Positions 8,266 through 64,000 of a DNA stretch of 64,000 nt are shown piece after piece. The notes beneath the pieces are model-generated. The model searched no databases. It worked only from the letters and a program-made list of their open reading frames with translations, and was not told the DNA's origin. The first letter of the stretch is position 1, and every line of letters begins with the position of its first letter. The translations under genes and the position numbers were made by a program. Location of the stretch: assembly GCA_002269645.1 (NCBI GenBank), contig NIVC01003903.1, positions 1-64,000 on the forward strand, read 5' to 3'. This DNA comes from Macrostomum lignano. Its lineage: Eukaryota.

Positions 8266-9125
8266 GAAGAGAAACGATAAGTAGATAGAAGCAAGTGTGC
8301 AATTAAACCTTTTGTCCCTTTTGCACATCCTGCTTGAAGAAAATTCTACATTAACTGAGCATTGCTATTCGCGAGGGGCACCGCGGACAGCATGAGTAGT
8401 TCTACTGGACAGATAAGCATATTGATAAGGATGTTTGTCAGACCTCTTTATCAGGATTTAGTTGACGTCAGCCAGAATCTACTAGCGCATATATTCTAGA
8501 CTAAATTGTGGACTGCAATATCCCCGATCTAAAGTAGAGCGTGATAGTTGGCAACTACTAGCTTGAGAACATGAGCGAGCCGCAGCAGCAGCAGCAGCAG
8601 CCTCCACCCTATGATGTCGTCACTCTCGAACCAAATGCCGCAACTATCGAAGAGAGCAGAAATTATCGATTTACAGAGTGTGAAATTATCGATTTATAGT
8701 GTGAAATTATCGATTTCTTGTGGGTGAAAGCATCGTATTTCATTAGGCTCAATACTTGAGAAGTTGCTGTTCCAAAAATGCAACGTCTACTCTTTGTAGC
8801 TGGCGTTTAAAACAAGCAAGAATCAACAGCCAAAAAAAACATTGGTTTGTCGTTTGCTTCTAAATTTTTACCAACCTTTGGCAAAACACTCACAGGAAGC
8901 AACCCAGCCACCCCTGATTGCTAATAAACTTAGCAGATGCACAGCCTGTGCGCAGTGCAGGGCGGGCAGTCAATGCACACCGCCAGCTGCACCCCACTGC
9001 ACACTCTACCCCAGCTGTACAATACGCACAGGGCGCAGCACTAAGACGGAAGGCGCAGGCAGTTCATATCAGCCTTCATCTCAGCAGTGAATTCTCAGCT
9101 AACTGCAAGCATCGCAGAGGCCGTC

Positions 9126-12100
9126 ATGCCGCTCCGCCAGCCGCTGAACCTGCGCACCAGACTGCACCAGGTGCGAGCTCGCTACCCATCCACCTGGGCC
9201 ATCCTGGGCCGCAAGCTGCAGCAAGGCGAATCTTGGCGAGCTCTGGTTGAAGACTACCTGGATTCTGAGGGCCGGCCTCTGTCAGCCGACCAGGCCCTGC
9301 TGGTCTGCCAGAGTCCTGGCGGAGAAGCCGCGGCCGCCCTGCTGCTGTGGGAGCGCAGCTGCAGCCTTGAAGAGCTGCTGGAGGTCCTGAGCCGTCGGGG
9401 ACTTCGCGAAGCCGAGGCCTTCGTGCGGTCCAACCTGCTGAACCAGGCCTGGCAGCCTCCGCCCACGACTGCGGAGCCGCCCCCTCCGTCTCTTCCGCCC
9501 CCGCCCCCGCCCGCGCCTCCGCCTCCGCTTCCACCAGACGACTCGCCGCTGGAGTTCCCGGCGGAGCAGCTCCGGCGCGCCGTGGCCTGCGGCTCCCTGA
9601 TCGGCTCGGGCGGCTTCGCCGAGGTCTTCCGGACGGCAGCGCTGGTCGAAGGCCGGCAGCACGCGGTGAAGGTCTACCGACCGGGCATCAGCGAGGAGGC
9701 GCGCCAGGCCATCCGCAGGTCGATCGGCGCCCTCAGCGGCCTGCGGCACCCGAGCATCGCTCGGCTGGTCGGCTTCGGCTACTCGCCCGCCGACGACCGC
9801 ATGTACTCCGTGTTCGACTTCCACAGCAACGGCGACCTCCGCCAGCTGCTCGACCGGTTCGCCGAGCCCCACAGCTGGTGGTCGTCGGCGGAGGCGGTGG
9901 CCAGCGGGTTTCACCTGGGCGGCACGCGGCTCCGCATGGCAACCGACATCGCCTCGGCCGTGGAGTTCCTGCACGCCACCGAGGAGAAGTCGATGGCGCG
10001 AGACGAGCGGGCCGGCCTCCTCAGCTTCAGCTTCGTGCACAAGGATGTGAAACCCAGCAACATCCTGGTTGACGGCGACTGGCGCTGCCGCCTCGCCGAC
10101 CTGGACTTCCTCGACCTGACCACCGCAGGGCTCGGCCAGACCGTCTGGGGTGAGCAGCGGGCCCAGCAGGTGGCCAGAGTGCACACGCTGGGCTACCGGC
10201 CGCCCGAAGACCGAGTCACCTGCAAGTGGGACGTCTTCAGCACCGGGGTCACCATCTTGGAGCTGCTCACCGGCCTGCGCGGCCAGCCCGCCAGCAGCGA
10301 CACTCCGGAGGAGTCCTGGCTCTGCTGGGCCCTGGCCGACGGTCGGGCTCCGCCGCCTCAGCCGGGGCTGCGGCTGTCCGCAGGTCTGCACGCCCGCGTC
10401 TGCAGAGAAGCCGTGGCGCCCTGCCTGCTGCACAACTTCGCCGAGAGGTGCACCGCCGCGGTGCTGCGGGGCCGCCTGCAGACGCTGCTGGCCGCGGCCG
10501 AGGCCGAGGACGGTGAGGCCGGGCTGCAGGAGTTCAGCTTCGCCGAGCTGGATGCCGCGGTCGGCGAGGAGCTCGGAGCCGGCAGCTTCGGCCGCGTGTA
10601 CCGGGTGAACCTGGCAGGGCGGCCGGTCGCCGTCAAGAAGCTGCTGCCCGACTCTGCGGGCATCCCGCTGGAGGCGCTGCGGCGCCAGGCGGGCCTCCGC
10701 CATCCCCGGCTGCTGTGGCTGCTCGGCTTCGCTCACCGCGGCGAGGCGGCGGGCGGCGACCTCCTGCTGGTCTACGAGCTGTGCGAGGCCGGCAACCTGC
10801 GGCAGCTGATTGACGACTTCGCCGCCGGCCGGGCACCGCCCGCCTGCGAGTTCCAGCTGGCCGGAGTTCGAATCCGGATGGCGCACGAGCTGGCCAGCGC
10901 CCTGGACTTCCTGCACAGCTGGCAGGAGGTCGAAGCCGCAGCGGCTGGCGACTGGCGCAGCTTCAGCCTGGCGCACCAGGATGTGAAGAGCACCAACGTG
11001 CTGCTCACTGCTGACTGGCACTGCAAGCTGGGCGACCTGGACAGCCTGCAGGTGCGTCTGGGGAGATCGGGGACAGCCTGCAGGTGTGTCTGGGGAGATC
11101 GGGGGCAGCCTGCAGGTGTGTCTGGGGAGATCGGGGACAGCCTGCAGGTGTGTCTGGGGAGATCGGGGACAGCCTGCAGGTGTGTCTGGGGAGATCGGGG
11201 GCAGCCTGCAGGTGTGTCTGGGGAGATCGGGGACAGCCTGCAGGTGTGTCTGGGGAGATCGGGGGCAGCCTGCAGGTGCGTCTGGAGAGATCGGGGACAG
11301 CCTGCAGGTGCGTCTGGGGAGATCGGGGGCAGCCTGCAGGTGCGTCTGGAGAGATCGGGGACAGCCTGCAGGTGCGTCTGGGGAGATCGGGGACAGCCTG
11401 CAGGTGTTGGGGAGATCGGGGACAGCCTGCAGGTGTGTCTGGGGAGATCGGGGACCGTCTGGGGAGATCGGAGACAGCCTGCAGGTGTGTCTGGGGAGAT
11501 CGGGGACAGCCTGCAGGTGTGTCTGGGGAGATCGCGGCTGCTCAGGCAACTGAGTTGAGGCTGCTCCGTCCTTTGAGTAGGGGCTGCTCTCCGTTCTCAG
11601 TCTCAGACTCTCCCTCCCTTCCTCCTCCCGCGCCAAGGACCACTGTAGTTTAACGCCAAGGACCACTGTAGTTTAACGCCAAGGACCACTGTAGTATAGC
11701 AACATGGACCACTGTAGTTTAACGCCAACAAGGAGGAATGAATGATTCCAAATTTTCCCTAAGCAGCCTCATCACAGTCTCCATTCCTGCCCCATCAGAC
11801 GGCCACCGCAGGATCGGGCCTCACGCGGATGGAAGACAGGCCGCAGTCCTCGCAGCCCAGAATCCGCTACTTCACCAATGGCTACTTCGTGCCGGGAGAA
11901 CCGGACAGGCCAGGCGCACCTGGCGAGCTCCTGTCCTGCAAGGTGGACGTGTACGCCCTTGGCGTCACCCTGCTGGAGCTGTTCACCGGCCGGCGCGCCT
12001 CTGGCGGCGGTGAGCCCGAGCTGCGACTGAGCCTGCTGGGCGACTCGTCAGTGCAGCAGCCGCCGTCGCCGCAGGTAGGGCTGCTTATCAGCGACAGGTG

Positions 12101-22118: not shown

Positions 22119-23138
22119 GCATCCCCGGCCGCAGTCCGCCTTGGCCGCGACTTCTACGCCCGCGACTGCGTGGAGCTGGCTAAGCGGCTGCTGGGCCAGC
22201 GCCTGGTCTGCGAGGCCTCGGACCCCAGCGGCTGCCGCTCAGCCGGCCGCATAGTGGAAACTGAGGCCTACCTGGGCGAGGCTGACCCGGCCGCGCACTC
22301 TTACAGAGGCCCAACTGAGCGCAACGCCGCTATGTTCATGCAGCCGGGCACCTGCTACGTGTACAGCATCTACGGCCAGTACTGCTGCATCAACGTATCA
22401 TCCAATGGCGACGGTTGCGCAGTACTAATCCGCGCCTTGGAACCGTGCGAAGGCGAGTCGGCTATGCAGTCGCGACGCGGCAAATTCGGTAAAACTACTA
22501 ATAGTAGCAATAATACCGTTGGCGCAAAATTGTTGAAACCGCACGAGCTGTGCAACGGTCCGTCCAAGCTGTGCCAAGCACTAGCAATTGATAAGCTGAC
22601 TCATAATAAAACTGACATGTGCGATCCGGCTGCCCGGGTGTACATTGAGTCGGCGCCCGGCCCGCCAACCAATCAGATTGTCACTTCGCGGCGGATCGGT
22701 ATTGACGGCTGCGGGCCGGCCGCCGCCGCCATGCCGCTGCGATTCTATTGGCTCGGCTGTTCCTGCGTTAGCCGGCGAGATAAGGACGCGGAGGCTTTGA
22801 CGGCGCCAGCCGAGGCGGCAACATCAAAGGCGTCAACTAATGCCAACTTGCCAACTTCAAAGCAGATATCGCAAGCAACTTCAAAGGCACCGCCGCCAAA
22901 TTCAAAGGCACCGCCGCCAACTTTAAAGGCACCGCCGCCAACTTCAAAGGCACCGCCGCCAACTTCAAAGGCACCGCCGCCAACTTCAAAGGCACCGCCG
23001 CCGCCAACTTCAAAGGCACCGCCGCCAACTTCAAAGGCACCGCCGCCGCCAACTTCAAAGACGTCGGCTAGGCCTAAATCACAAATCCGGAATGCCGATT
23101 CCGATTCGTCGCCACCCAAACGAAAGCGGCTTCGCTAG
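22119..23138 (+). CDS. MPG: 3-methyladenine DNA glycosylase (AAG/MPG) with SKAPPPT-repeat tail; initiator Met not in the genomic ORF
   Basis: RLGRDFY..DCVELAKRLLG, GRIVETEAYLG..DPAAHSYRG.TERNAAMF..PG..YVY.IYG.Y.C.NVS, AVLIRALEP, NGPSKLCQAL, RIGI. Confidence 0.93.
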   Translation, partial: ASPAAVRLGRDFYARDCVELAKRLLGQRLVCEASDPSGCRSAGRIVETEAYLGEADPAAHSYRGPTERNAAMFMQPGTCYVYSIYGQYCCINVSSNGDGCAVLIRALEPCEGESAMQSRRGKFGKTTNSSNNTVGAKLLKPHELCNGPSKLCQALAIDKLTHNKTDMCDPAARVYIESAPGPPTNQIVTSRRIGIDGCGPAAAAMPLRFYWLGCSCVSRRDKDAEALTAPAEAATSKASTNANLPTSKQISQATSKAPPPNSKAPPPTLKAPPPTSKAPPPTSKAPPPTSKAPPPPTSKAPPPTSKAPPPPTSKTSARPKSQIRNADSDSSPPKRKRLR

Positions 23139-46911: not shown

Positions 46912-47895
46912 TTAGGAATTAAAGACGAATCGCCGGAAACTGAACGTCAATCGACGCAGTCTGGCCGCCAGCTTCCCGTCTGCGGCTGCTGCTTGTTGCT
47001 GCTGAGGATGCAGCAGCTGAGGCGGTTGCAGCGCTGACGACGGAGGCGGCGGAGCTCGCCGTTTTGATGCCCGCCTGTAGTCCTCGCTGCTGGCTGAGCG
47101 TCGAACTGTGGCCACTGCAGTGATCGGTGTCGGGGGCGGCGGTCGAGGCGGTGGAGTGGGCAATCGCGGTGGCGGAGGTCGCTGCGGCGGCAGCTGCCGC
47201 GATGCAGATGACTCTTGGGTTGGCGAAGTCTCTAACTGAGGCGCAGTCTGCAGACGCGGCACCGGTCCGGCTTGGGGCGGAAGCAGGTCGTTCAGCAATG
47301 CGGGAAGTTGTATGCGACGCCAATCCTGCTGACCATCGGCGACAGACAATCCGGCGATCAGGTCGGCTAGAACTGCTTCAACTGCATTCAGCCGGGCAGC
47401 GTCACTTCGCTCGGGACTTGTCAATGCCGTGGAAAGCGCGCCTGGATCACTTCCTGTGCTTGAATTTGCAACACCGGAAGCAGCACCGGAGGCAACACCG
47501 GAAGCAACTTCAGAAGTAATTCCGGAAGCAACACCGGAAGTAAAATCTGAAGAAGTATCTATAGAAATAACATCAGAAGTATTCGTGCCTTCAGAAGCAA
47601 CACCAGAAGCGTAGATTGCCGCTCTACGCCGCTCGACCAAGCCAGCCAGGCAGACATTTCTGGGCAGCTCCAGTCCCGCAGGACAGCGGCCTCGGCAGAG
47701 CGGGCAGGCGTCACCGCCGGGCTGCTGACGCCAGTCGGTCAGGCAGGCGCAGCAGAAGCTGTGGCCGCAGGGCGTCACCCGTGGATCCTCAAACAGGCAG
47801 TCGCAGATGCTGCAGGTGAGATCCGCGTCATCGTCATCATTGGATAGATCTGCTCTGACTCGCTCAGAAGTTCCTAATCCGAGTTGTGACATCAT
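46912..47895 (-). CDS. RING-HC (C3HC4) finger protein with low-complexity, Pro-rich C-terminus
   Basis: CSICDCLFEDPRVTPCGHSFCCACL...CPLCR followed by N..L..LVE. Single exon; acceptor acacag lies 3 nt before the ATG. Confidence 0.85.
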   Translation of the reverse strand: MMSQLGLGTSERVRADLSNDDDDADLTCSICDCLFEDPRVTPCGHSFCCACLTDWRQQPGGDACPLCRGRCPAGLELPRNVCLAGLVERRRAAIYASGVASEGTNTSDVISIDTSSDFTSGVASGITSEVASGVASGAASGVANSSTGSDPGALSTALTSPERSDAARLNAVEAVLADLIAGLSVADGQQDWRRIQLPALLNDLLPPQAGPVPRLQTAPQLETSPTQESSASRQLPPQRPPPPRLPTPPPRPPPPTPITAVATVRRSASSEDYRRASKRRAPPPPSSALQPPQLLHPQQQQAAAADGKLAARLRRLTFSFRRFVFNS

Positions 47896-51737: not shown

Positions 51738-54700
51738 TTAGAAATTAACAGTGCTGGCCTCCAAACCAACGGCGAAGCCTTCGCCCATGGTGACTGGCAG
51801 CCAGGCCAGCCGGTAGTACCAGTTGCTCACCGCCAGCAGCTGGCCCGGCCGCAGCACCGCCTGCAGGGGGGCGCACCGGCCGCTGCAGGCCTCGCGCGGC
51901 GTCAGCTCGATCCGAATCGTGCCTTTCACCTGGGTCAGAGAGTGGTCAGCTGGATCAGAGTGGCAACTGGGTCAGATAGCGGTCACCTGGGTCAGAGTGC
52001 TCAACAAGGTTAGGCAACTGGTCACCCGGGTCAGAGTGGTCACCTGGGTCAGAGTGCTCAACAAGGTTAGGCAACTGGTCACCTGGGTCAGAGTGGTCAC
52101 CTAGGTCAGAGAGTGGTCACCTGGGATAGAGTGGTCACCTGGGTCAGAGAGTGGTCATCTGGGTCAGAGAGTGGTCACCTGGGATAGAGAGTAGTCACCT
52201 GGGTCAGAGAGTGGTCACCTGGATCAGAGTGATCAACTGGGTCAGATAGCGGTCACCTGGGTCAGAGAGTGGTCACCTGGGTCAGAGTGGTCAACAGGGT
52301 TAGGCAAGTGGTCACCTGGGTCAGAGAGAGGTCTACTGGGTCAGAGAGTAGTCAAATGGGTCAGAAAGTGGTCACCTGGGTCAGAGAGTGGTCACCTGGG
52401 TCAGAGAGTGGTCACCTGGGTCAGAGAGTGGTCACCTGGGTCAGAAAGTGTTCACCTGGGTCAGAGAGTGGTCACCTGGGTCAGAAAGTGTTCACCTGGG
52501 TCAGAGAGTGGTCACCTGGGTCAGAGAGTGGTCAACTGGGTCAGAGAGTGGTCAACTGGGTCAGAGAGTGGTCAACTGGGTTAGAGAGAGGTCAAATGGG
52601 TCAGAGAGTCGTCAAATGGGTCAGAGAGTCGTCAAATGGGTCAGAGAGTGGTCAAATGGGTCAGAGTGGTCACCTGGGTCAGAGTGGTCACTTGGTTCAG
52701 ATAGTGGTCAACAGGGTTAGACAATTGGTCGACTGAGTCAGAAAATTGGTCAACTGAGTCAGACAATTAGTCAAATGAGTCAGACAAATGGTCAAATGAG
52801 TCAGATAACTGGTTAAATTAGTCAGATTATTAGTCAAATGAATCAGACAAATGGTCAAATGAGTTGGATAACTGGTTAAATGAGTCAGATTATTAGTCAA
52901 ATGAGTCAGATAACTGGTCAAATGAGTCAGACTATTGGTCGAATGAGTCAGACTGTTGGCCTAATGAGTCAGACAATTGGTCAAATGAGTCAGACAAATG
53001 GTCAAATGAGTCAGAAAATTGGCCAAATGAGTCAAATAACTGGTTAAATGAGTCAGATTATTAGTCAAATGAGTCAGACAACTGGTCAAATGAGTCAGAC
53101 TATTGGTCGAATGAGTCATACAACTGGTCGAATGAGTCAGACTATTGGTCAAATGAGTCAGACAACTGGTCGAATGAGTCATACAACTGGTCGAATGAGT
53201 GATACAACTGGTAAAATGAGTCAGACAATTGACCAAATGAGTCAGACCTGATGCAGCAGCAGCAGAGTGTGCTCAGGCCTGGTCGGCAGTGTCATGAACT
53301 CGTGTCCGGGATGTGACTGCCACATCAGCAAGTGGCTGTGTCCGAATGAGACGGACAGGGGGAGGCATTCCGGCCGGCCGAGATACAGGCGGAATTTGCG
53401 CACGACCTCCGGATGGCAGTTGCGCCAGGAGGCCGCCCAGCCGGTGCCGGGGCCGCTGCCCAGAACTTCAGTGGCGGCCGCCCGGAGCAGTCGAGTCGGC
53501 GAGTTGAGCGACGGCCGCGACCTAGCCAGGCTGTGCCGCATGTCGCAGACGCCTTCAACCGCGGCCGAAACCAATAAAGCCGCCGACGCGGCTTCTTTAG
53601 CTGACTGCGGGGCGACGTCCGACAGCTGAGGCTCCAGTGGAGGCAGCTGGGAGTAGAACGTGTGCAGCTGCGCCACCTGGGCGATGGACGGCCCCGCTGA
53701 GAACAGCGGAGTCGAACCCGCGGCCTGCCGTTTGGGTGGGGAAGGTTGTTGGCTAAACCCGCGATTGATGATGGAGCTTTAGAGATTTTCCTATTGGGTT
53801 TAGGGAGGGCGATTTTTCTATTAAGTCTGGGGAGGGGCGATTTTTCTATAGGGTTTGGGGGGCGATTTTTCTATTATGTGGGGAAGGGCGACTTTTCTAT
53901 TGGGTTCGAGGAGGGGCGATAATTCTATTGTGTTTGGGGAGGGCGATTTTCTTTTAGGTTCGGGAGGGCAATTTTTCGATTGGGTTTGGGGAGGGCGATT
54001 TTCTTCTGGGTTCGGGAGGGCGATTTTTCTATAGGGTTTGGGGAGGGCGATTTTTCTATTAAGTCTGGGGAGGGGCGATTTTTCTATTGGGTTTAGGGAG
54101 GGCGATTGTCCTATTGGGTTTAAAGGGGCGATTTTTCTGTTGGGTTTGAGGAGGGCGATTTTTCTATTAAGTCTGGGGAGGGGCGATTTTTCTATTGAGT
54201 TTGGCAATGGGCGATTTTTCTATTGGGTTTGGGGAGGGCGATTATTCTATTGGTTGAGGCAGGGCGATTATTTCATGGGTATCGAATTCACAAGCGCACC
54301 TCCGGGTCGATAATTGCAGGCTGCTGAGTGTTAATCAGATCGCGAACAAAGTCGGCAGGTCGGAACGGGCCCTCCCGGATGCGGATGACGCGGTCCAGCG
54401 AGGCGCAGTTGCGACAGTCGTCGGGCGATTTCAGCACAAACGGCGGAGTGTGCATCGGGTTGCCGATGAGGCAGAGCTCGTCTGGCAGGCCGAGCCACTC
54501 GGCAATGGGCAGAATGGTGGCTGCCGTTGCTACGCGGAGATGCTTCATCACCGATAGACTGGCCTGCATGCGAGAATTCAAGAGTCGGCGATTTCTCCTA
54601 TTATTTACTACTCTCATACTGCTAGTAGTATGGGCTTGATATGTGAATAAAAATTGTAACAAAATATAAATAGTTAATACGAATGAATTGTACAGCTTGT

Positions 54701-55330: not shown

Positions 55331-57879
55331 AATGTAAGTTGTTCAAGTTGTCAGCAATAATTAATTGTCCATGCATTAAATTTTTATTTGCTAAACATTA
55401 TCAACTTCTTTAGATTGGAAGTACACTCAATAATATTTTTTTTCATCACAAAACCAGCTCAACAGGACTGAGGACTGAGTTGCAGCTTTTATTTAATTCT
55501 ATAGTCATAATTCTCCACTCTCCTTATCAACCCAAGCCAGGGCTTTGTGACAAAAATCGCATCACCTATAGCTTAGATAAGAATGGTGCACATGGTATAA
55601 ATTATATCACTTAATGCTAAGATATAAAGAAAATTTAATCACTGATTTTAGGATATAAACATGTTACTAAATATATAATACTATTTTGGAAGCTTTAACA
55701 GGACCAATACCAATTGAATACAGCTATATCAAAACCCCTATTAGGCATAAATCTATATCAAAGTTCTTTGATAAGCAAATAATGTCATACATAATCTTAA
55801 AGTTGCCAAGTAATTAACCCAAGCTACTATTGAAAGCCTATATTTTAGCAAAGGATCAAATTGAAGTTTTAAAAATAATATTAGATAATATTAAGATGCC
55901 AAATATAGCCAACTTTTTATTTGCCATAGACATATAGACCTTAGTATACTTGGCAAACTATTTTTACAAAATCTACAAAATACCCTTTGGTTATAGGTTT
56001 AAAAGCAAGATTTTGCTATAGTGTCCTATTCTATGACAAAATGTAAACTAAAAAGCTGCTAGCCTGACTTGGTCTTATGGAAACTAGACAAGTCTAGTTA
56101 AAGACTATTTAAATAAAGTAGAATAAAAGCTTAGGGCCTATTAGAATATATTAAATAAAAATTATTTAGGCCTATTAACTATCATCTATCTGTTTAGGCC
56201 TATTTCAATAGCTATTTGTTGTTTCAATAAAACTTATTATCAATGGATACTAGTAATTAATTTTAGGCCATTTTGGCGAATTGCCAAAAATATAGATTTT
56301 TAAGGATGCAAATATTATTTGATTGCCTTTAAAATGACTAGGCTAGGCTCCACTATACTTTAAATAAGAAACTCTTTGTATCATTTTTTACAATAAAAAT
56401 TAGCCTAGAATTAAATTGTTATAAATTATTATACGGCCTATGAAACTTAGTTTTGGCATGATTATATCCAAGATATAGCCTTGCTTATACTCTTTACTTG
56501 GAATAAACAAATATTAGTAGCTTGTTCAAATTCAAATACTAATGATTAATGTCAATTTAAATTTGCAAGACATGATATCCCTGTGATCTATATTTAGTTG
56601 ATTATTTCTTTAAAAATACAAATATAAATTATTTGTCAAATGGAATATTAAAAACATTTTTTAGTTGGCATTCAAATTTTATTTGATACTAGTCATATTG
56701 AAATTAATTATTGTCAATGATTTTACCCTTAATCTATTTCAGGCTAAGCTTTAAATTGAAAGTAATACAAAAGTATGAGTCATCAGTCAACCCTAGACAA
56801 CCGGATTGCTCATTAATTATTGTGATTGTAATTCAATTGGGAAAATTGTAAAAATTGCAATTTGCTCGTGCAATCAGCTTGCAATCTAGATAAGTGCCTA
56901 AGAGCCATCTTTTTCTACTGATGAGTAGTCAAGTTAAAATTGGGGACTTGCGATAATTGCAATCTGATTATAAGAACATGCATGGCAGAAAAAAAAAGTG
57001 TTCTATGTTTTATATATTCAAATACTTTTATGACCATACACAATATTTTTTCATGAAAATATCTTTATTTTTATAGGTTCTGATAATGCATTCTATTGTT
57101 GTTTTACTTTGCATTAAAATAATGATCTAACCAAAATAAGTAAACGGCTTGCCAGGTATAATTTTCTTTGCGGCAAATGCTGACTACAGTGAGGGCTCCC
57201 ACGGCGTTTCTTCTTCAAAGTTTCTACTACATCTGTACGAACAGAACCATTTGTTCTTTTAACTTTCTTGTAGTGTGTTTATATTCAGTCTCAGTCTAAA
57301 GTTTTTTCTTTTCGCACTGAATTTAATTTTTAACATTCACAATGCACAAAGCAAATGTAGATGCCAAGGGCAAGGCTATTCATTCATTCATTCAGTCAAT
57401 CAATAATCAGGTTATTCATTCATTCAGTCCATTCAGGGGCTGTTAAAAAATTGTAGCTATATTTAGCTATATTTAGTTTTTAGCTATATTGCCTCTAAGT
57501 CAAATCAAAATTGAAACACTCTTAATTCTTTAATAGTGATAATCAATTTTGGTTAATAGTTTGCTCTTTTGGAACTTTTAAATGCCAGTTTTTTCTTTTG
57601 GTAATCCTGCTTTATATTCTAGATTTTCAACTTCCATCCTATTCAATAGCTAGGCCTAGTACTATTCATATATTGTCTAATGTCTCCTTATTTTATTTGC
57701 ATGTATTTGCTTACTATAAAATAAATTGCTCTCTCTAGACTAGTAGTCCAATGAGTCTATACCTATGCTACCAAGTACCTTAGGCCTAACTTTAATTAAA
57801 TTGAATTGTTATGCTATAGAACCTTGAATAGCTACTAGGTATAGCTAGTTTTGAAATATAATTTGAACATTGAAGACTT

Positions 57880-58475
57880 GGAATCTGGTCCATTTCAGCA
57901 ACAAACCATTTCGGTGACACCCATTTCGGTGACAGGTTGATTTGGCAAGAACCATTTTGGCAACAGTTTTTAAATAGGATTTTGAATGTATTCTTATCTC
58001 ATAGCCACAAAAGATTTCAGAACTTACACAAATTTACAACCTTTGGTTTGATTAAGTGTTGTTAAAATGAATTATAGTGTAAAACAATTTACATTAAACT
58101 TTATAAGCTTTGTTAAAACTATGTTAAAACAATTTTTAATGTAAAACTTAAAACGAATGGATTACAATTAGAAATTAATGTTCTTAAGAAACAAGAAAAT
58201 TCAAATTCCAATTCAAAATTACAATTCGTGTATGATGTTTACTCTTCCACAGGGGCATTCATGCCACTGCATGCAAGCAGCGCCTCAAGAGTTCTGGTGC
58301 CGGCTTTGTACTTTGCCCAATAGTTTCAACAAAATGCCTGTTGGGGGTCATGTCAGCTGGGGGTAGTTTATTGTATTGTAGATACTTGTAATTTTTCTAT
58401 TATATTTGTCAAGGAAATGGTCGTCGCCAAATTGACCTGTCGCCAAAATGGGTGTTGCCGAAATGGACAGGTACC
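57880..58475. mobile_element. MITE with inverted ccattt(c/t)gg(c/t)gaca subterminal repeats and 7-bp TSD
   Basis: Left end ggaatctggtccatttcagcaac versus right-end reverse complement ggtacctgtccatttcggcaac; exact AAGACTT on both flanks. Confidence 0.75.
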
Positions 58476-59036
58476 AAGACTTAAAGTAGCTAAGCAACAG
58501 GCCTACTAGACTATAATAAGCAGTAAGGGTGGGCCTAATACTAATTGGTACTGGTATCCTTTTTTAATTGAACTATCACCTATGCCTATGCTATGGGTAT
58601 GGCTATGTTTAGATAGCTATTATATTACTATAGGCCTAGTTTATAGTAGAGCTACTATAGTTAGGCTATACAACATGTCAACAATGCTATAACAGTCAAA
58701 ACTAGCTACCCTATGGATCTATATTTTGATATGTTCTAGCTATTTTCTTTTTTACACAATGCTGAAGTCATTAAAATTGTAAACATGCAAAGGTAATGAA
58801 AATAGATACATGATTAAAATTCTATTGAATATATTGTGTTCATATTAATAGTCTATAGAGTATAGACTATATAATCATTAGGTCCAGTATAGCTATTTAG
58901 GGAAAATTAATTAATTAATTGACAAAAAATAGATAGCTATATAGCTCTAGTATCATAGTAGTATTGATCTACATTTTGTTTATTTGATTTCATTGGTATA
59001 GTAAAAAAGCTTAAATATTTTTTCATCTTTTCAGGT

Positions 59037-60148
59037 ATGAAAACTTCTCAACACATTAATTCTCGCTCAAGATCATCCAACAAGCTTGACAAGTTTGCAA
59101 CTCTAAGTTTTGACCATGTCATTCTATGGTTCCCAAAGACAAATTCCCATAGTGGACCTATTTATATAAATTCTAGTTTTCTTAGCCATTTTGACAAGGC
59201 TGAGAAAATGGAATTTAAGGAGCGTCAACAAATCAAGATTCGTGAAAAGAATGGATTCCATGATGCCATTATTGTGAAGCTCGGCACTTATGCAAAAATT
59301 AAAATTGCTGAACAAACTATTGACCGCCTTGCTGAAGAAGGTTATAGTACTGAGACAATTTTTGAGAGACTTGATAATGAAATGTCTGTTGATTTGGATG
59401 CACGAACACGAACCTCTGCTACCTATTTGGGAGATAGTGATAGCAATGAAGGTGATGATGAAGAAAATGATGAGAACTATGTGCCACCTGATGACAGGTC
59501 TACAACTTTTAAGCCTCCTTTGACAATTACTAGCCAGACTATGTCTTTGGAAAGGCAGAAGGAAGCAGATTTGTTCAAGTCTTATGGCAATGTGATTGTG
59601 GAGCCACCACTTAAGAAAGCTAAGAGTGCAAGTTGTGACCTTATTGATAATGCTAAGAATGGTGCCTGTGCACCTTTGTACTCATCTACACCACCTAGAA
59701 AACCACAGGATGTTGCCCTAGCTCAATGTATGAGACCAAGTAGCTTTTTTGTGACTTTTACAGAGCCAGCTACTGCTGCAGCAAGCCCACTTGCTCAGGG
59801 TTCCAAACTTCAAGCACCTGAGCCTAAAGTGTTAGATTTGCTTTTGCTTGAGGCTCGAGTACAAACTGGATTGTTGAAAAAGATCATCCGGCTACAGGAA
59901 GAAGGAAATGAATTGCTCAGACAAGGGTTTGGTTTCAATGATGAGGTTGTGAGCAAAGAAGATCAAGTTATTGCTGGTTGTGATGGCCGACCCTTTCGCC
60001 TGTCTCAGTTACCATTGCCACCTAACCTTTTTGCTCATGAGTTTGTACTCCGCAAATTTGGTGAACAGCTTTGTGAAACAACAATTATTGAGTCACATGG
60101 CAGAAGTGAAAGGATTGCTATGGATGTTGATTCAGTTCAAGCTCATTC
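59037..60148 (+). CDS. Transposon-associated ORF with acidic linker and a truncated BEN-like C-terminal domain
   Basis: Long ORF after acceptor ttttcag. LFAHEFVLRKFGEQLCETTIIESHGRSERIAMD resembles the start of a BEN domain; it is cut off by BEL sequence at about 60149. Confidence 0.45.
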
Positions 60149-61186
60149 AGTCGGCCGCTGTTGTATGTACCTTCAGATTCAGGCGACGGTATGGGGGTCA
60201 TCACACTGTCCCATTTCATTGCAGCTAGTCGTCTCAGCCAAGAACCGGAAGATATTGACGATGAGGCGGACTCCATTCTACCGCTTCCGAAATGGCTCAG
60301 AATGCTTAGAGCAGCTCTGGATTGGTTTTGGAACCAATGGAAGACGTCCTACTTGGAGTCTCTGCGCGAGAAAGCCCTAAAGGATCAACCTAACCACCGC
60401 CTACCAAATGTTGGTGAAGTAGTTCTTCTGGCAGGTGAAGCTCAACAACCAAGACTCAAGTGGAAATTGGGTATTGTCGAGGAAGTTCGTCCTGGCCGTG
60501 ATGGTGCTATCCGGTCGGTTCTTTGCATTGCGGGTGCTGGGAGTTCTTTGGGAACGGGTGAGACAGCCAGTCCAGTCGTTAATTCCTTTAGAGGTTCAAT
60601 CCTAAGACCGTTATTTTTTTGTCCTTTCCCACGACTCTCGAATTTGTTTGCTAACTTTTTTGACAGCCTCTTGCAAAATTTTGTAATGGGAAAAGGTTTG
60701 TTTTCTGTTTTTGAGATAATTCTCTTGGTGGTGGACAATGTTACGCGTCATTATTCGTCATTTTTCCATTTACGTTGTAATATATTTTTTCCTCATCTAT
60801 CATGCTCACATACACTTAAACTTGGCTCTAACAGTTTTCTGTTCTCTGCTGACTGTTTCACTTACAACAACAAACCAGTCCTTGTCTGTTATGCTAAGAT
60901 TTTTTTCCTTTTTCATTGTTTTTTTTGCAACAAGTTTGAATGTAATGTAGTTTTGCTGCTCCGAATTTAAAAAATCAAATGATAAATCATTTGGGGGGAG
61001 TGTCGAAAAATGAGTTGGCCTAGGCTAGCCGCTTATTTCATCTAATTTATTTTCTCTTATTTTTCACTGTATGCACAATGTATATCTCCGCCAACACCCC
61101 AAAATTCGTTAAGTTAGAAAATATAAAAGCTGGATTCTGGGCAGCGACCGCCCTAACTTCATTTTCTTTATCGCCAGTCAAAATCA
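60149..61186 (+). mobile_element. BEL/Pao LTR retrotransposon 3' fragment (DUF5641-like region, PPT, 3' LTR about 61001-61186)
   Basis: RPLLYVP...ITLSHF, WFWNQWKTSYLESLRE, VGEVVLL, WKLGIVEEVRPGRDGAIRSV. GGGGGGAG at 60993-61000 is followed directly by TGTCG; candidate LTR end ...AATCA. Confidence 0.75.
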
Positions 61187-62780
61187 ATTATTGGTTTATT
61201 TTATTATAGGAACAGGGATTAAGACAGACATACTTAAAAATTGTCCAATAATTTATGATACTGCCCAAGTTATTACAATCTTTTTGCATCTTTCCACTGA
61301 TGGCTGTAGCTTGTACTCTAATTCTCCCTCTTCTTTGTGGCCTGTTCAAGCTCAAATTTTAAATCTTCCAACATTTTTGCATTTTCAGCCAGAAAACTTC
61401 TTAATTTTTTCTCTCTTTCTTGGTGCAAAGAAGCCTAACTGGAAAACATTTCTAGAAGACCATCTGGCTTCAGTTTTTGAAAAAAACATTCTGTTTTACT
61501 ATTCAAAACAGGCCTATGCATTTTCGTGTTAAACTCTTTTCGGCTACTTTTGATCTTCCTGCCTTGGCTAGCATACTAAACCATAAGCAATTTAATGGCG
61601 AGTTTGGTTGCCTTTACTGTGAAAATCCCAGTAGTACTGTTAAAGTCGGCCATGGATCCGCACGCAAGTATTCTGAGCCTCATTTATCTACTCCAGTTTC
61701 GAATGCTGTTTATTTATCACGAGTTCAACTAGTCTGTCTCTCTGGTGAGAAGAGCCTTTTTGGTATTAAGGGTGATTCTGTTCTTAGGAAGTATGTGCGC
61801 ATTCCAAAGAATATTTTGCTTGATTCATTGCACTTTCTTTATGAAAATTGTTGTGGCACTCTAATGAAATATATGTTTGATGGTTCCTACCAACAACTGA
61901 GTTGCTACCTTGGGCAAAGTCTGCCCTTCTTTAATGATACTCTTAAAAGAGTCAGCGTGCCTAAGTCAGTAACAGTATCATTTTGTCTAGAGCTTCGCTC
62001 TTCGTGGAAAGCCAAGGATTACATGTTCGCTGCAATGTATCTATTGCCTATATTTGCTTTCCATTGCTTCAGTAGGAAAAATCAGGCATGCGCCATTGCT
62101 TTGCTTTCTTTTTCTCTTGTTTGTCATGTAGCAAATTCTGTAGACTGTGAGCACTACTTGGCGCTTCTCAATAAAGTAATTCAACACTTTATGTCAACTT
62201 TAGGAACTGCATTTGATGCCAATGTATACACAATTAATTTTCATCTCCTGTGTCATTTGCCTGAACAGCTTCTCAATTTTGGTCCTCTAACAGGATACTC
62301 TATGTTCTCATTTGAGAGTCAATTTTCAACGGTAAAGAATTATATTCAAAGGAATCGATTCCATATCAAGCAAATATGCGAAAAGCTCATTCTGCAAAAA
62401 TGTTGCACTTTCTGTCTTAAGGAGGGAGCTGCTGCTCAATCTAACAGCTGCATTTTTGAGCTGCTCACTTCTAAGTTTAGAATTTTATCAAGCAGTCCTT
62501 CCGCCTGCTGGCGATTTCTATCCACTTATGCAATAGTGCAAAACAATCGTCTCTTTTATGCTACTTCTTATTCGAAATTGCCCCCTACTCGGTCATGTAT
62601 TGTGCAGTTGAAAGATGGTTGTTTCTGCAAAGTAGTTTGTTTTCTGAATGGCACCGATATTTTAGCTGATGTAATTTTTTTAGACATCTGCAATTTACAA
62701 GACTTTTTAGGTAAAGTGGCTCGCTTGATGAAGAGTAGATAAATAAAGGTACATATCAACATGAAGTGTTGTTTGAGTTG

Positions 62781-62820
62781 CCGATGCATTTCGTCCATTT
62801 GCATTGGGACATCGTCAGGG
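62781..62820 (-). ncRNA. Candidate minimal type I hammerhead ribozyme, left-arm copy
   Basis: CC-CUGACGA-U-GUCC-CAAUGCAAAU-GGAC-GAA-AUGCAU-C-GG. Confidence 0.55.
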
Positions 62821-63456
62821 TCTTTTTATTGAGAAACAATTTGAACGAATATTCAGTATATATAGATAGTTGAGAGTAACAAGAGTAGTTGAATTGAGTT
62901 TTTAATTGATGGTTTAAAACTTGTACATAGTAATCAATTTTTGATACAGTATTGGTTGGGTAAAGTGCATATCAGTTTCAAGCCAGTCCGGTCATTGACA
63001 AATCAGCTAAAAAATTCTGAGTTGACGGCTAGCCCCACCCATCGCAAGTTGGTTGTTTAACGTGGGCTGTTTGGTCTTAATGTACATGTTTAATGTACAT
63101 CTTTAATGTACATTAGTTAATGTACATCTTTAATGATAAAGGCTATTGATTTTTGTAATAGAGATCACATGCTCTGCCTATTAGAAGCCCTGTACATTAA
63201 GACCAAACAGCCCACGTTAAATAACCAACTTGCGATGGGTGGGGCTAGCCGTCAACTCAGAATTTTTTAGCTGATTTGTCAATGACCGGACTGGCTTGAA
63301 ACTGATATGCACTTTACCCAACCAATACTGTATCAAAAATTGATTACTATGTACAAGTTTTAAACCATCAATTAAAAACTCAATTCAACTACTCTTGTTA
63401 CTCTCAACTATCTATATATACTGAATATTCGTTCAAATTGTTTCTCAATAAAAAGA

Positions 63457-63496
63457 CCCTGACGATGTCCTAATGCAAATGGACGAAATGCATCGG
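63457..63496 (+). ncRNA. Candidate minimal type I hammerhead ribozyme, right-arm copy; predicted cleavage after AUC at 63494
   Basis: CC-CUGACGA-U-GUCC-UAAUGCAAAU-GGAC-GAA-AUGCAU-C-GG; helix I is only 2-3 bp. Confidence 0.55.
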
Positions 63497-64000
63497 CGGC
63501 TCAAATGGTGCTTCATGTTGATATTTACCTTTATTTATCTACAAGACTTTTTGAATCTGTCCAATGTACCTATTGCTGCTGATATATTATGTTTAGCAAA
63601 GACTTTCTTGTTTATCTGCTGCCCGTCTTCTAACACCTGCACTATTCCAGTGGGATGTAATTTTCTGCATCAGTGTGTTTCAGTCAATAATATTTTTCCC
63701 GATAAGGACTTGTGTCTTGTTATACTAGATTCTTGCCACCATGAATATAGCTTAATTTGGGATGACTTAAAAGCTGAGTAGGAACTGTTAAAACTGAGTA
63801 AGCACTACTAAGAATTGTATCTGTCGCGGATCATTTTCAAAATATAGATCACTTGAACCAATTGCCATACAATAATTGCTTATTGCTTGCTAGTTGTGTA
63901 TCTTGTTTGATTTTTTGTTGACTGTTGTATAGTTAGAAAAAGGTAAAAATACAAGAAAACATTTTATATGTACTCAAATTTCAATTTTAATGACTTTTAA

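What the first reader, a model, noticed from the sequence alone, without database searches (positions are those of the whole stretch)
62710..63552. Palindromic insertion with twin outward-facing hammerhead ribozyme cores (Penelope/retrozyme-like)
Seen: 352-bp inverted arms, a 104-bp spacer with stuttered aatgtaca repeats, a 13-bp TSD, and an insertion site that restores the transposase frame when removed. Each arm has CUGACGA-U-GUCC-loop-GGAC-GAA-AUGCAU-C. The few arm mismatches spare the core and helix II pairs and cluster just 3' of the predicted cut. Established: Penelope-like elements make inverted terminal structures with variable TSDs and carry minimal hammerheads with short palindromic helix III thought to cleave as dimers. 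Schistosoma Sm-alpha has a similar GUCC/GGAC helix II, and an extra base between A9 and G10.1 is tolerated in the CChMVd hammerhead. Inference: a non-autonomous, self-cleaving, fold-back retroelement whose transcript from either strand would be cut near its 3' end and could form a long hairpin or circular RNA. Weakness: helix I is only 2-3 bp.
Basis: partly seen in the sequence, partly recalled or inferred. Interest (0 to 1): 0.82.

Follow-up and report, generated by a model that had tools for sequence, protein, structure and literature searches.

The report
Twin truncated Penelope-type insertion with hammerhead motifs
An 831-bp palindromic insertion in a flatworm (Macrostomum lignano) transposase gene looks like the usual product of a Penelope-like retrotransposon, two truncated tail ends inserted head-to-head, each carrying the minimal hammerhead ribozyme motif typical of these elements; it is a new example of a known kind.

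Summary
There are 352-nt inverted arms, a 104-nt spacer with a 13-nt stutter, a 13-bp target-site duplication (TSD), and four empty-site paralogues in Macrostomum lignano that prove a discrete insertion. Each arm carries CUGACGA-U-GUCC..GGAC-GAAA-UGCAU-C. This meets every published feature of the minimal hammerhead (HHR) of Penelope-like elements (PLEs) except a long helix I. About 0.02 such motifs are expected by chance per 64 kb. Rfam finds no hammerhead, but it also misses bona fide PLE hammerheads in control loci. The layout matches a beetle PLE control: TSD, a 26-nt one-sided tail, an inverted 5'-truncated copy, a direct copy, TSD. The best reading is one PLE-type insertion event primed from both nicked strands, with the ribozyme motif as passive cargo. 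Not shown: a PLE ORF, other copies, or cleavage. Cleavage at this locus is unlikely, because there is no tandem partner and the motif is locked in a 352-bp hairpin. The arm mismatches say nothing about the ribozyme. All transitions give G:U on the + strand and have ADAR-like neighbours. They may be A-to-I editing imprinted by RNA-seq polishing, as documented for the Mlig_3_7 assembly; whether the window comes from that assembly is not established. New member of a known kind; modest interest.

The parts
62696..62708 (.). Left copy of the 13-bp target-site duplication TACAAGACTTTTT
   Evidence: It is present once in the empty-site paralogues L001, L005, L006 and L007.
62709..62734 (-). 26-nt one-sided extension ('tail') outside the inverted repeat. 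In sense (minus-strand) orientation it reads CTCTTCATCAAGCGAGCCACTTTACCT and continues the 3' end of the left copy.
   Evidence: It is not matched in the right arm. It is analogous to the 29-30-nt tail present only at the inverted-copy end of the Sitophilus PLE insertion L002 and to the PLE tail described in PMC8557442 and PMC11167929.
62735..63086 (-). Left arm: a 5'-truncated copy of the element's 3' region, sense on the minus strand, 3' end outward
   Evidence: Inverted repeat. No coding similarity.
62781..62820 (-). Hammerhead motif of the left copy: CC-CUGACGA-U-GUCC-CAAUGCAAAU-GGAC-GAA-AUGCAU-C|GG, with the predicted cut between 62783 and 62782
   Evidence: Descriptor hit. Chance expectation 0.023 per 64 kb.
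63077..63135 (.). Stutter TTAATGTACATCT x4.5 at the inner junction. It contains the palindrome AATGTACATT and begins inside the left arm.
   Evidence: TRF; direct-repeat family D1.
63087..63190 (.). 104-nt spacer: 49 nt of stutter plus 55 nt of unique sequence. Probably the extra length of the longer of the two cDNA copies plus junction slippage (inferred).
63191..63539 (+). Right arm: a 5'-truncated copy, sense on the plus strand, 3' end outward, without a tail. The inverted-repeat match runs to 63542 and overlaps the TSD by 3 nt.
63457..63496 (+). Hammerhead motif of the right copy: CC-CUGACGA-U-GUCC-UAAUGCAAAU-GGAC-GAA-AUGCAU-C|GG, with the predicted cut after 63494
   Evidence: The architecture is the same as the PLE hammerheads in PAc, Sitophilus L002 and Podarcis L003.
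63540..63552 (.). Right copy of the 13-bp TSD
61477..62708 (+). Host: upstream part of a CACTA/EnSpm-type transposase ORF (DUF4218; relatives carry Transposase_21)
63553..63781 (+). Host: downstream part of the same ORF, in frame once 844 bp are removed

Best explanation
The window is Macrostomum lignano DNA. The 831-bp element (62709-63539) is the product of one Penelope-like-element (PLE) type retrotransposition event into a CACTA-type transposase gene.

Inferred mechanism. A GIY-YIG-type endonuclease nicked both strands 13 bp apart. Both 3'-OH ends primed reverse transcription near the 3' end of an element RNA. One primed at the usual start site and the other 26 nt further downstream, which gives the one-sided tail. 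Both cDNAs stopped early, at about 352 nt and up to about 456 nt. They were joined head-to-head at a TGTACA palindrome with template slippage, which gives the stutter. Each copy therefore carries, 44 nt from its 3' end, the minimal type-I hammerhead motif that PLEs keep in their terminal repeats.

The parent is unresolved. It is either a PLE with an unusually long 3' UTR or, more likely, a non-coding PLE-dependent derivative of the retrozyme kind, because about 395 nt upstream of the motif has no coding signal.

At this locus the motif is passive cargo. There is no tandem second copy to build the dimeric helix III, and a transcript across the element folds into a 352-bp hairpin. That hairpin RNA, made from the + strand, appears to be an ADAR substrate.

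Shown: insertion, TSD, asymmetry, motif, and the match to control PLE loci. Inferred: double-strand priming, the junction mechanism, inactivity of the ribozyme, and editing.
For: Insertion and TSD are proven by four empty sites. A second filled copy, L004, is 99.1% identical across the locus.

Motif. CUGANGA, an extra U, G10.1-C11.1 in a 4-bp helix II, GAAA, the palindrome AUGCAU and C17 are all present. The descriptor finds only these two hits in the window plus L001. The shuffle expectation is 0.023 per 64 kb, or 0.007 if the palindromic helix III is also required.

The same descriptor on bona fide PLE loci finds paired opposite-strand hammerheads with the same extra U. Sitophilus L002 has them at +6308 and -3309. 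Podarcis L003 has them at +6959 and -2511. Poseidon_Ac has CUGAGGA-U-GCC..GGC-GAAACGUC.

Layout. L002 has an 11-bp TSD, a 29-30-nt tail only at the inverted-copy end, and the hammerhead starting 90 nt from the 3' end. Here the values are a 13-bp TSD, a 26-nt tail, and 80 nt.

Literature. PLE insertions are 5'-truncated, often have an adjacent inverted truncated copy, and carry a one-sided 30-40-bp tail (PMC8557442). A PLE protein nicks and extends both strands and starts reverse transcription at two internal sites that bracket the tail (PMC11167929). [quoted passage not shown]

Two metagenome contigs with the same CUGANGA-U-GUCC..GGAC-GAAA motif also carry PLE ORF fragments (L080, L114).
Against: No RT or GIY-YIG coding remnant is present in the arms, the window, or about 110 kb of other M. 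lignano DNA. No other copy of the arms was found in about 175 kb of M. lignano sequence or among predicted proteins, so the link to a PLE family in this genome is structural only.

Helix I is 2 bp, or 3 with a bulge. Helix II is 4 bp, against 6-8 bp in most PLE min-HHRs. Rfam gives no hammerhead hit, although the controls show this is uninformative.

The tail is 26 nt, slightly below the published 30-40 nt. The G:U-only mismatch pattern, if it is real DNA, fits a hairpin RNA intermediate better than two independent cDNAs.
Confidence: 0.7

Rival explanations
1. The fold-back itself is a mobile, non-autonomous retroelement. Its + strand RNA (antisense arm, spacer, sense arm with hammerhead) forms a hairpin, is edited by ADAR, and is then reverse-transcribed as a unit by a PLE enzyme and inserted. 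Under this reading the G:U mismatches are heritable editing footprints.
For: All 9 transition mismatches in the window give G:U on the + strand and A:C on the - strand. Changes in the two arms interdigitate within the same 5 bp of the stem. Under an A-to-G model the 5' neighbours are U6, A2, C1, G0. These 9 sites are shared by both filled loci, so they predate the split of the two loci. The arms are non-coding for about 395 nt upstream of the motif. Flatworms have active ADARs (PMC8797187).
Against: L004, which carries the same insertion by descent, has 5 further A-to-G differences of the same kind. A retro-copied edit cannot explain these. RNA-seq polishing of the Mlig_3_7 assembly (PMC5730564) can. 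The RNA 5' end would have to coincide with the outer end of the tail. No second fold-back copy with the same junction was found. The standard twin-copy PLE layout explains the structure without a new element type.
Confidence: 0.15
2. A DNA transposon of the MITE or Foldback kind with long terminal inverted repeats. The hammerhead-like string is a coincidence.
For: It has long near-perfect inverted repeats, a small size, no ORF, and a flanking direct repeat.
Against: The inverted repeat does not reach the left end: 26 nt are unpaired. To my knowledge a 13-bp TSD is longer than those of known DNA-transposon superfamilies. The motif is expected only 0.02 times per 64 kb, or about 1e-4 per arm. 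The whole layout, including the distance from motif to end, copies a bona fide PLE insertion.
Confidence: 0.05
3. The element is PLE-derived, and its hammerhead is active at this locus. It would cut transcripts 44 nt from the 3' end, for example in trans with other copies' RNA or co-transcriptionally.
For: The core is intact in all four sequenced copies (both arms of the window and of L004). The palindromic AUGCAU could pair between two RNA molecules.
Against: The monomer's lowest-energy fold pairs loop-2 AUGCA with helix-III UGCAU rather than forming the hammerhead. A 352-bp intramolecular stem of -639 kcal/mol competes with the ribozyme fold. PLE min-HHRs show little or no cleavage in vitro even as dimers (PMC4209133), and cleavage is dispensable for insertion in vitro (PMC11167929).
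Confidence: 0.1

Closest known systems
Penelope-like element (PLE) insertions with an adjacent inverted 5'-truncated copy and a one-sided tail (Evgen'ev & Arkhipova 2005; Craig et al. 2021, PMC8557442; PMC11167929)
   Same: It has a TSD of non-fixed length and two copies with their 3' ends outward. A hammerhead sits about 80-90 nt from each 3' end. A 26-30-nt extension is present at one end only. The layout matches the Sitophilus control L002 point by point.
   Different: Both copies are short fragments (352 to about 456 nt) and no RT/GIY-YIG ORF is present. The region upstream of the hammerhead is non-coding for about 395 nt, whereas the ORF stop is 22 nt (Sitophilus) or 126 nt (Poseidon_Ac) upstream in the controls. 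No parent PLE was identified in M. lignano.
Minimal type-I hammerheads of metazoan PLEs (Cervera & de la Pena 2014, PMC4209133)
   Same: [quoted passage not shown]
   Different: Helix II is the canonical 4-bp GUCC/GGAC with a 10-nt loop rather than 6-8 bp. Helix III is the 6-nt palindrome AUGCAU rather than ACGU. Loop 2 repeats AUGCA and can mispair with helix III.
Metazoan non-LTR retrozymes (Cervera & de la Pena 2020, PMC7229834; Li et al. 2026 preprint, 10.64898/2026.07.22.740005)
   Same: It is non-coding and AT-rich, carries a type-I hammerhead, has a TSD longer than 4 bp, and is thought to depend on PLE enzymes.
   Different: Retrozymes are head-to-tail tandem units of 170-400 nt, each with a hammerhead. 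Here there is no tandem repeat and only one hammerhead per 352-456-nt copy, and the copies are inverted.
Schistosoma Sm-alpha SINE hammerhead
   Same: It comes from a flatworm host and has the GUCC/GGAC helix II followed by GAAA (sequence from my memory, not tested here).
   Different: To my knowledge Sm-alpha has a canonical 6-bp helix I with loop-loop contacts, no extra base after A9, and is detected by Rfam Hammerhead_1. This motif is not detected.
L1 twin priming
   Same: It is an inverted structure created during target-primed reverse transcription, with a TSD.
   Different: To my knowledge twin priming inverts a different, more 5' segment of one RNA. Here both arms are the same 3'-terminal segment, so there were two initiations at the element's 3' end, as shown for a PLE protein (PMC11167929).

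Membership tests
PLE-derived insertion | Hammerhead motif near the 3' end or in the terminal repeat | tested here: met
   The motif starts 80 nt from the 3' end of each arm. The controls show 90 nt in L002.
PLE-derived insertion | 5'-truncated copies arranged as an inverted pair with 3' ends outward | tested here: met
   The same arrangement is seen in L002 and L003 and described in PMC8557442.
PLE-derived insertion | Optional 30-40-bp tail at one end only | tested here: met
   A 26-nt extension is present only at the left end. It is slightly shorter than published; L002 has 29-30 nt.
PLE-derived insertion | TSD of variable length | tested here: met
   13 bp here and 11 bp in L002.
PLE-derived insertion | RT plus GIY-YIG ORF, or sequence homology of the fragment to a PLE that has one, in the same genome | tested here: not met
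   tblastn with 121 PLE proteins against the window and L001 found nothing below E = 0.004, and only a chance-level hit in the spacer. Pfam on arm peptides was empty. A whole-genome search was not possible with these tools, so the homology part remains open.
Hammerhead ribozyme, PLE minimal type I | Catalytic boxes CUGANGA and GAAA with G10.1-C11.1 closing helix II | tested here: met
   Chance expectation is 0.023 per 64 kb.
Hammerhead ribozyme, PLE minimal type I | [quoted passage not shown] | tested here: met
   U at 63466 and 62811. The same U occurs in PAc, L002 and L003. The feature is listed in PMC4209133.
Hammerhead ribozyme, PLE minimal type I | Palindromic helix III (15.2-16.2) and H17 | tested here: met
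   AUGCAU followed by C.
Hammerhead ribozyme, PLE minimal type I | Helix I of 4-5 bp | tested here: not met
   Only CC/GG pairs (2 bp, or 3 with a bulge). A 2-bp helix I is reported for D. virilis PLE hammerheads (PMC4209133).
Hammerhead ribozyme, PLE minimal type I | Match to curated covariance models | tested here: inconclusive
   There was no Rfam hammerhead hit even at E <= 10 on 101 nt. The bona fide PLE hammerheads of L002 and L003 are missed as well.
Hammerhead ribozyme, PLE minimal type I | Core conserved, with compensatory changes in the helices, among copies | tested here: inconclusive
   Only four copies are available (two arms in each of two loci). The core and helix II are invariant and only loop 2 varies (U/C).
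Hammerhead ribozyme, PLE minimal type I | Self-cleavage | not testable with these tools
   Folding predicts a non-hammerhead lowest-energy fold for the monomer and sequestration of the motif in the long hairpin.
Non-LTR retrozyme | Head-to-tail tandem units, each with a type-I hammerhead | tested here: not met
   There is no direct repeat of the arm or a second sense hammerhead.
MITE / Foldback DNA transposon | Terminal inverted repeats that reach both ends, with a TSD of a fixed short length | tested here: not met
   26 nt at the left end lie outside the repeat. The TSD is 13 bp.

The most novel reading that the evidence does not exclude
The fold-back is itself a propagating, PLE-mobilised non-coding element. 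It travels as a long hairpin RNA, and the G:U-only arm mismatches are ADAR edits fixed in the germline by reverse transcription. That would be a direct case of RNA editing written back into DNA by a Penelope-type enzyme.
Probability: 0.12. Interest if true: 0.65.

Novelty: new member of a known kind. Interest (0 to 1): 0.33.

Why it matters
The finding adds Macrostomum, a basal free-living flatworm model, to the taxa that carry Penelope-type minimal hammerheads. I found no paper mentioning hammerhead ribozymes in this genus, nor one on Penelope elements in it among the titles and abstracts returned.

It is also a clean, datable example of a PLE-type insertion. Four empty sites and two filled copies are available, and both strands appear to have been primed, as shown in vitro for an anole PLE.

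There are two practical points. First, Rfam models do not see this hammerhead class, so a negative Infernal scan means little for it. Second, the one-strand A-to-G pattern in the hairpin suggests the element's RNA is ADAR-edited in vivo. It also suggests that polishing the Mlig_3_7 assembly with RNA-seq may have written edits into the reference. That would affect variant and editing calls in this model organism.

Tried and rejected
Rfam at gathering and at E <= 10 gave no hammerhead, on the whole window, on 1.3 kb and on 101 nt. Controls showed this is uninformative.

Searches for other copies all failed:
- blastn within the window;
- exact look-up of arm-spanning ORFs;
- a concatenated six-frame peptide query against 5.8 billion proteins;
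- blastn against five M. lignano loci, where only L004, the same insertion, matched;
- an exact-pattern scan of metagenomes with the full motif, which gave 0 hits.

A search for M. lignano PLE proteins using Poseidon_Ac returned 4603 hits, but none of the 120 listed were from flatworms. tblastn of PLE proteins against the M. lignano DNA in hand found nothing.

I tried to establish which assembly the window comes from, by exact look-ups of window ORFs and of the spliced transposase. None are on record.

The relaxed metagenome pattern gave 120+ hits, mostly at chance level. Only a few look like real hammerheads, and two sit near PLE ORF fragments. None show extended homology to the arms.

No other long inverted repeat was available in the M. 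lignano DNA in hand to test whether G:U-only mismatches are general.

Rejected explanations:
- Snap-back synthesis of the second arm from the first. It cannot create a tail that is absent from the template arm.
- CpG or flank-type mutation as the source of the mismatches. Flank differences fall on both strands.
- A PacBio missed-adapter palindrome. The arms are unrelated to the flanks and are bounded by a TSD.
Full report
WHAT IS THERE

The inverted repeat is real. The arms lie at 62735-63086 and 63191-63542; they are 352 nt and 97% complementary, with 104 nt between them. They differ at 10 positions. The spacer begins with a 13-nt unit, TTAATGTACATCT, repeated 4.5 times at 63077-63135. This unit contains the palindrome AATGTACATT and starts inside the left arm. 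TACAAGACTTTTT flanks the element at 62696-62708 and 63540-63552. Between the left TSD and the left arm lie 26 nt (62709-62734, AGGTAAAGTGGCTCGCTTGATGAAGAG) that have no partner at the right end.

ORGANISM AND PROOF OF INSERTION

The interrupted ORF carries DUF4218. It is 95% identical to a Macrostomum lignano protein with Transposase_21 and DUF4218, a CACTA/EnSpm-type transposase. Four copies of this transposon in assembly GCA_002269645.1 (L001, L005, L006, L007; 95-97% identical in the flanks) have a single copy of the 13-mer and no insert. Removing 844 bp restores the frame.

A fifth locus, L004 (NIVC01002163.1), is 99.1% identical to window 55901-64000 and contains the same insertion at the same site. 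There it is annotated as an 844-nt intron of BOX15_Mlig034519g2. No offset within the TSD gives GT-AG ends, so the intron is non-canonical. The insertion is therefore younger than the roughly 4% divergence from the empty copies and older than the 0.9% split between the window and L004.

THE HAMMERHEAD MOTIF

On the + strand at 63457-63496 the sequence reads CC-CUGACGA-U-GUCC-UAAUGCAAAU-GGAC-GAA-AUGCAU-C|GG. The mirror copy lies on the - strand at 62820-62781 and has C instead of U at the first loop position.

I wrote a relaxed descriptor: CUGANGA, 0-1 inserted base, a helix II of at least 4 bp closed by G-C, a 3-30-nt loop, then GAAA. It finds only these two sites in the window plus L001. In 300 dinucleotide-preserving shuffles of the window, 0.023 hits per 64 kb are expected, or 0.007 if a palindromic helix III and H17 are also required. 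For one 352-nt arm that is about 1e-4.

Cervera & de la Pena (PMC4209133) list the traits that set metazoan PLE minimal hammerheads apart:
- G10.1-C11.1;
- palindromic positions 15.2-16.2;
- a short helix I, only 2 bp in D. virilis, which also has a 2-nt palindromic insertion in helix III.

All of these are present here. The same paper reports dual min-HHRs 100-700 bp apart on opposite strands in Schistosoma.

- The Poseidon_Ac consensus (supplement of PMC11167929) has CUGAGGA-U-GCC..GGC-GAAACGUC|AGG.
- A Sitophilus oryzae PLE locus (L002) gives two descriptor hits, at +6308 (22 nt after the ORF stop) and -3309.
- A Podarcis muralis PLE locus (L003) gives +6959 and -2511.

All of these have the extra U, so that A9-U-G10.1 reads AUG, as it does here.

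Rfam detects none of these bona fide PLE hammerheads, even when only 101 nt are searched at E <= 10. The negative Rfam result for the window therefore carries no weight.

A pattern scan of metagenome contigs for CTGANGATGTCC-N(4-16)-GGACGAAA returned mostly chance matches. A few were convincing hammerheads with 5-6-bp helix I and ACGU or ACAUGU helix III, and two contigs also carried PLE ORF fragments (L080, L114).

THE LAYOUT IS THAT OF A PLE INSERTION

In L002 the insertion reads, from left to right:
- TSD TATTTTGTGTT (11 bp);
- a 29-30-nt tail;
- an inverted 5'-truncated copy;
- the full-length copy;
- the TSD again.

The tail is present only at the inverted-copy end, and the hammerhead starts 90 nt from each 3' end. 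The M. lignano element reads: TSD (13 bp), a 26-nt tail, an inverted copy (352 nt), the spacer, a direct copy (352 nt), TSD. The hammerhead starts 80 nt from each 3' end.

Craig et al. describe exactly this arrangement: 5' truncation, an adjacent inverted truncated copy, and a one-sided 30-40-bp tail (PMC8557442). The anole PLE protein nicks and extends both target strands and starts reverse transcription at two internal sites whose interval is the tail (PMC11167929).

The economical reading is one event with priming from both nicks. Both cDNAs aborted early and were joined at the TGTACA palindrome. Two identical antisense cDNAs can anneal only at a palindrome, which would explain why the arms end there and why the junction stutters. 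This last step is inference.

WHAT IS NOT SHOWN

No RT or GIY-YIG coding remnant exists in the arms, the window, or the other M. lignano loci. No further copy of the arm was found. The roughly 395 nt upstream of the hammerhead are non-coding, whereas the PLE controls end their ORF 22-126 nt upstream. The parent is therefore either a PLE with a long 3' UTR or, more likely, a non-coding PLE-dependent derivative. It does not meet the definition of a non-LTR retrozyme, because there are no tandem units.

WOULD IT CLEAVE?

Probably not at this locus. Helix III exists only as an intermolecular or tandem dimer, and the two copies here are on opposite strands. The isolated monomer's minimum-energy fold pairs loop-2 AUGCA with helix-III UGCAU; that fold is -14.1 kcal/mol, against -13.0 with helix II enforced. 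Any transcript through both arms folds into a 352-bp stem of -639 kcal/mol on the + strand. Published PLE min-HHRs cleave poorly even as dimers (PMC4209133), and cleavage is dispensable for insertion in vitro (PMC11167929).

THE ARM MISMATCHES

The sparing is not significant (P = 0.41). The real pattern is different.

- All 9 transition mismatches pair G with T on the + strand, so they are A:C on the - strand. The + strand RNA stem is uninterrupted except for one C:U, while the - strand stem has nine internal loops and is 23 kcal/mol weaker.
- In the 5-bp cluster the changes alternate between the two arms.
- L004 shares all nine sites and has five more, again all G:T on the + strand. It has A-T where the window has C:T. 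The total is 14 G:T against 0 A:C (two-sided P about 1e-4).
- Under an A-to-G model the 5' neighbours are U10, A3, C1, G0, against a background of 28% U (P = 9e-4). To my knowledge this matches the ADAR preference.
- Flank substitutions are not strand-biased in this way.

Because L004 and the window carry the same insertion by descent, the five extra A-to-G changes cannot be retro-copied edits. The Mlig_3_7 assembly was polished with Pilon using RNA-seq as well as DNA reads (PMC5730564). The simplest explanation is that A-to-I editing of the + strand hairpin RNA, which lies inside a + strand gene model, was written into the assembly. I could not establish whether the window itself comes from that assembly.

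If the nine shared sites are real DNA, a retro-copied edited hairpin becomes attractive (rival 1). Either way the pattern points to an expressed, ADAR-edited hairpin and not to ribozyme constraint. Planarian ADARs are functional (PMC8797187).

VERDICT

The 'Penelope-like with twin hammerhead cores' label is supported by motif statistics, by the published diagnostic traits and by same-session controls. The 'self-cleaving fold-back retroelement' mechanism is not needed and is partly contradicted.

This is a new member of a known kind, a PLE-type twin truncated insertion in Macrostomum. Its interest as a ribozyme finding is low to moderate. The ADAR or polishing footprint is a side observation worth a quick check against raw reads.

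Noticed in passing
window 62735-63542; L004 11220-12027: All transition mismatches between the arms are G:T on the + strand: 9 in the window and 14 in L004, never A:C. Under an A-to-G model the 5' neighbours look like ADAR targets (U10, A3, C1, G0). The Mlig_3_7 assembly was polished with RNA-seq, so in vivo A-to-I editing of this hairpin may be imprinted in the reference sequence.
   Followed up: partly
L004 10001-12266 (NIVC01002163.1), equivalent to window 61516-63781: The same insertion is annotated as an 844-nt intron of gene BOX15_Mlig034519g2 (P0126). No offset within the TSD gives GT-AG ends. The model probably reflects transcripts from an insertion-free allele or paralogue. A usable donor-like AG|GTAAAG (62709-62716) and a polypyrimidine tract plus AG acceptor (about 63521-63545) also exist; splicing there would leave +9 nt in frame.
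   Followed up: partly
window 61218-62708 vs L001 10631-12120: Differences between the window's transposase copy and the empty-site paralogue are strongly skewed. The window has A where L001 has G 18 times and T where L001 has C 12 times; the reverse occurs only 2 and 0 times. This suggests GC-to-AT decay of the interrupted copy lineage (direction not polarised).
   Followed up: no
window 59037-60970: ORFs of a retroelement lie just upstream of the transposase; 60161-60970 carries DUF5641, which I recall as typical of BEL/Pao integrase C-termini. The same pairing recurs in L001 and L004-L007, so the whole block of about 8 kb is a multi-copy or duplicated unit.
   Followed up: no
window 51926-54280: This is a long tandem array with a short period; the self-offsets are multiples of about 20 nt. 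It aligns at only 80-93% and in many registers with L004, so the satellite varies between the duplicated loci.
   Followed up: no
window 63500-63519 (+) and 62758-62777 (-): Just 3' of the predicted cut, the sense strand of the left copy can form a local stem-loop, CAACA-CUUCA-UGUUG. In the right copy all five pairs are G:U wobbles (UGGUG...UGUUG). It recalls the AC-rich stem-loop near the reverse-transcription start site of the anole PLE.
   Followed up: no
L002 3179-6409 (Sitophilus oryzae) and L003 2511/6959 (Podarcis muralis): Both PLE control loci carry paired opposite-strand hammerheads that Rfam does not detect at E <= 10. The Rfam hammerhead families therefore do not cover the PLE minimal class.
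   Followed up: yes
window 9087-11558, 22170-23138, 46912-47895: Ordinary host genes share the window: a tandem protein-kinase-domain ORF, a methylpurine-DNA glycosylase and a RING-finger ORF. G+C content varies widely along the window, from 26% to 67%.
   Followed up: no
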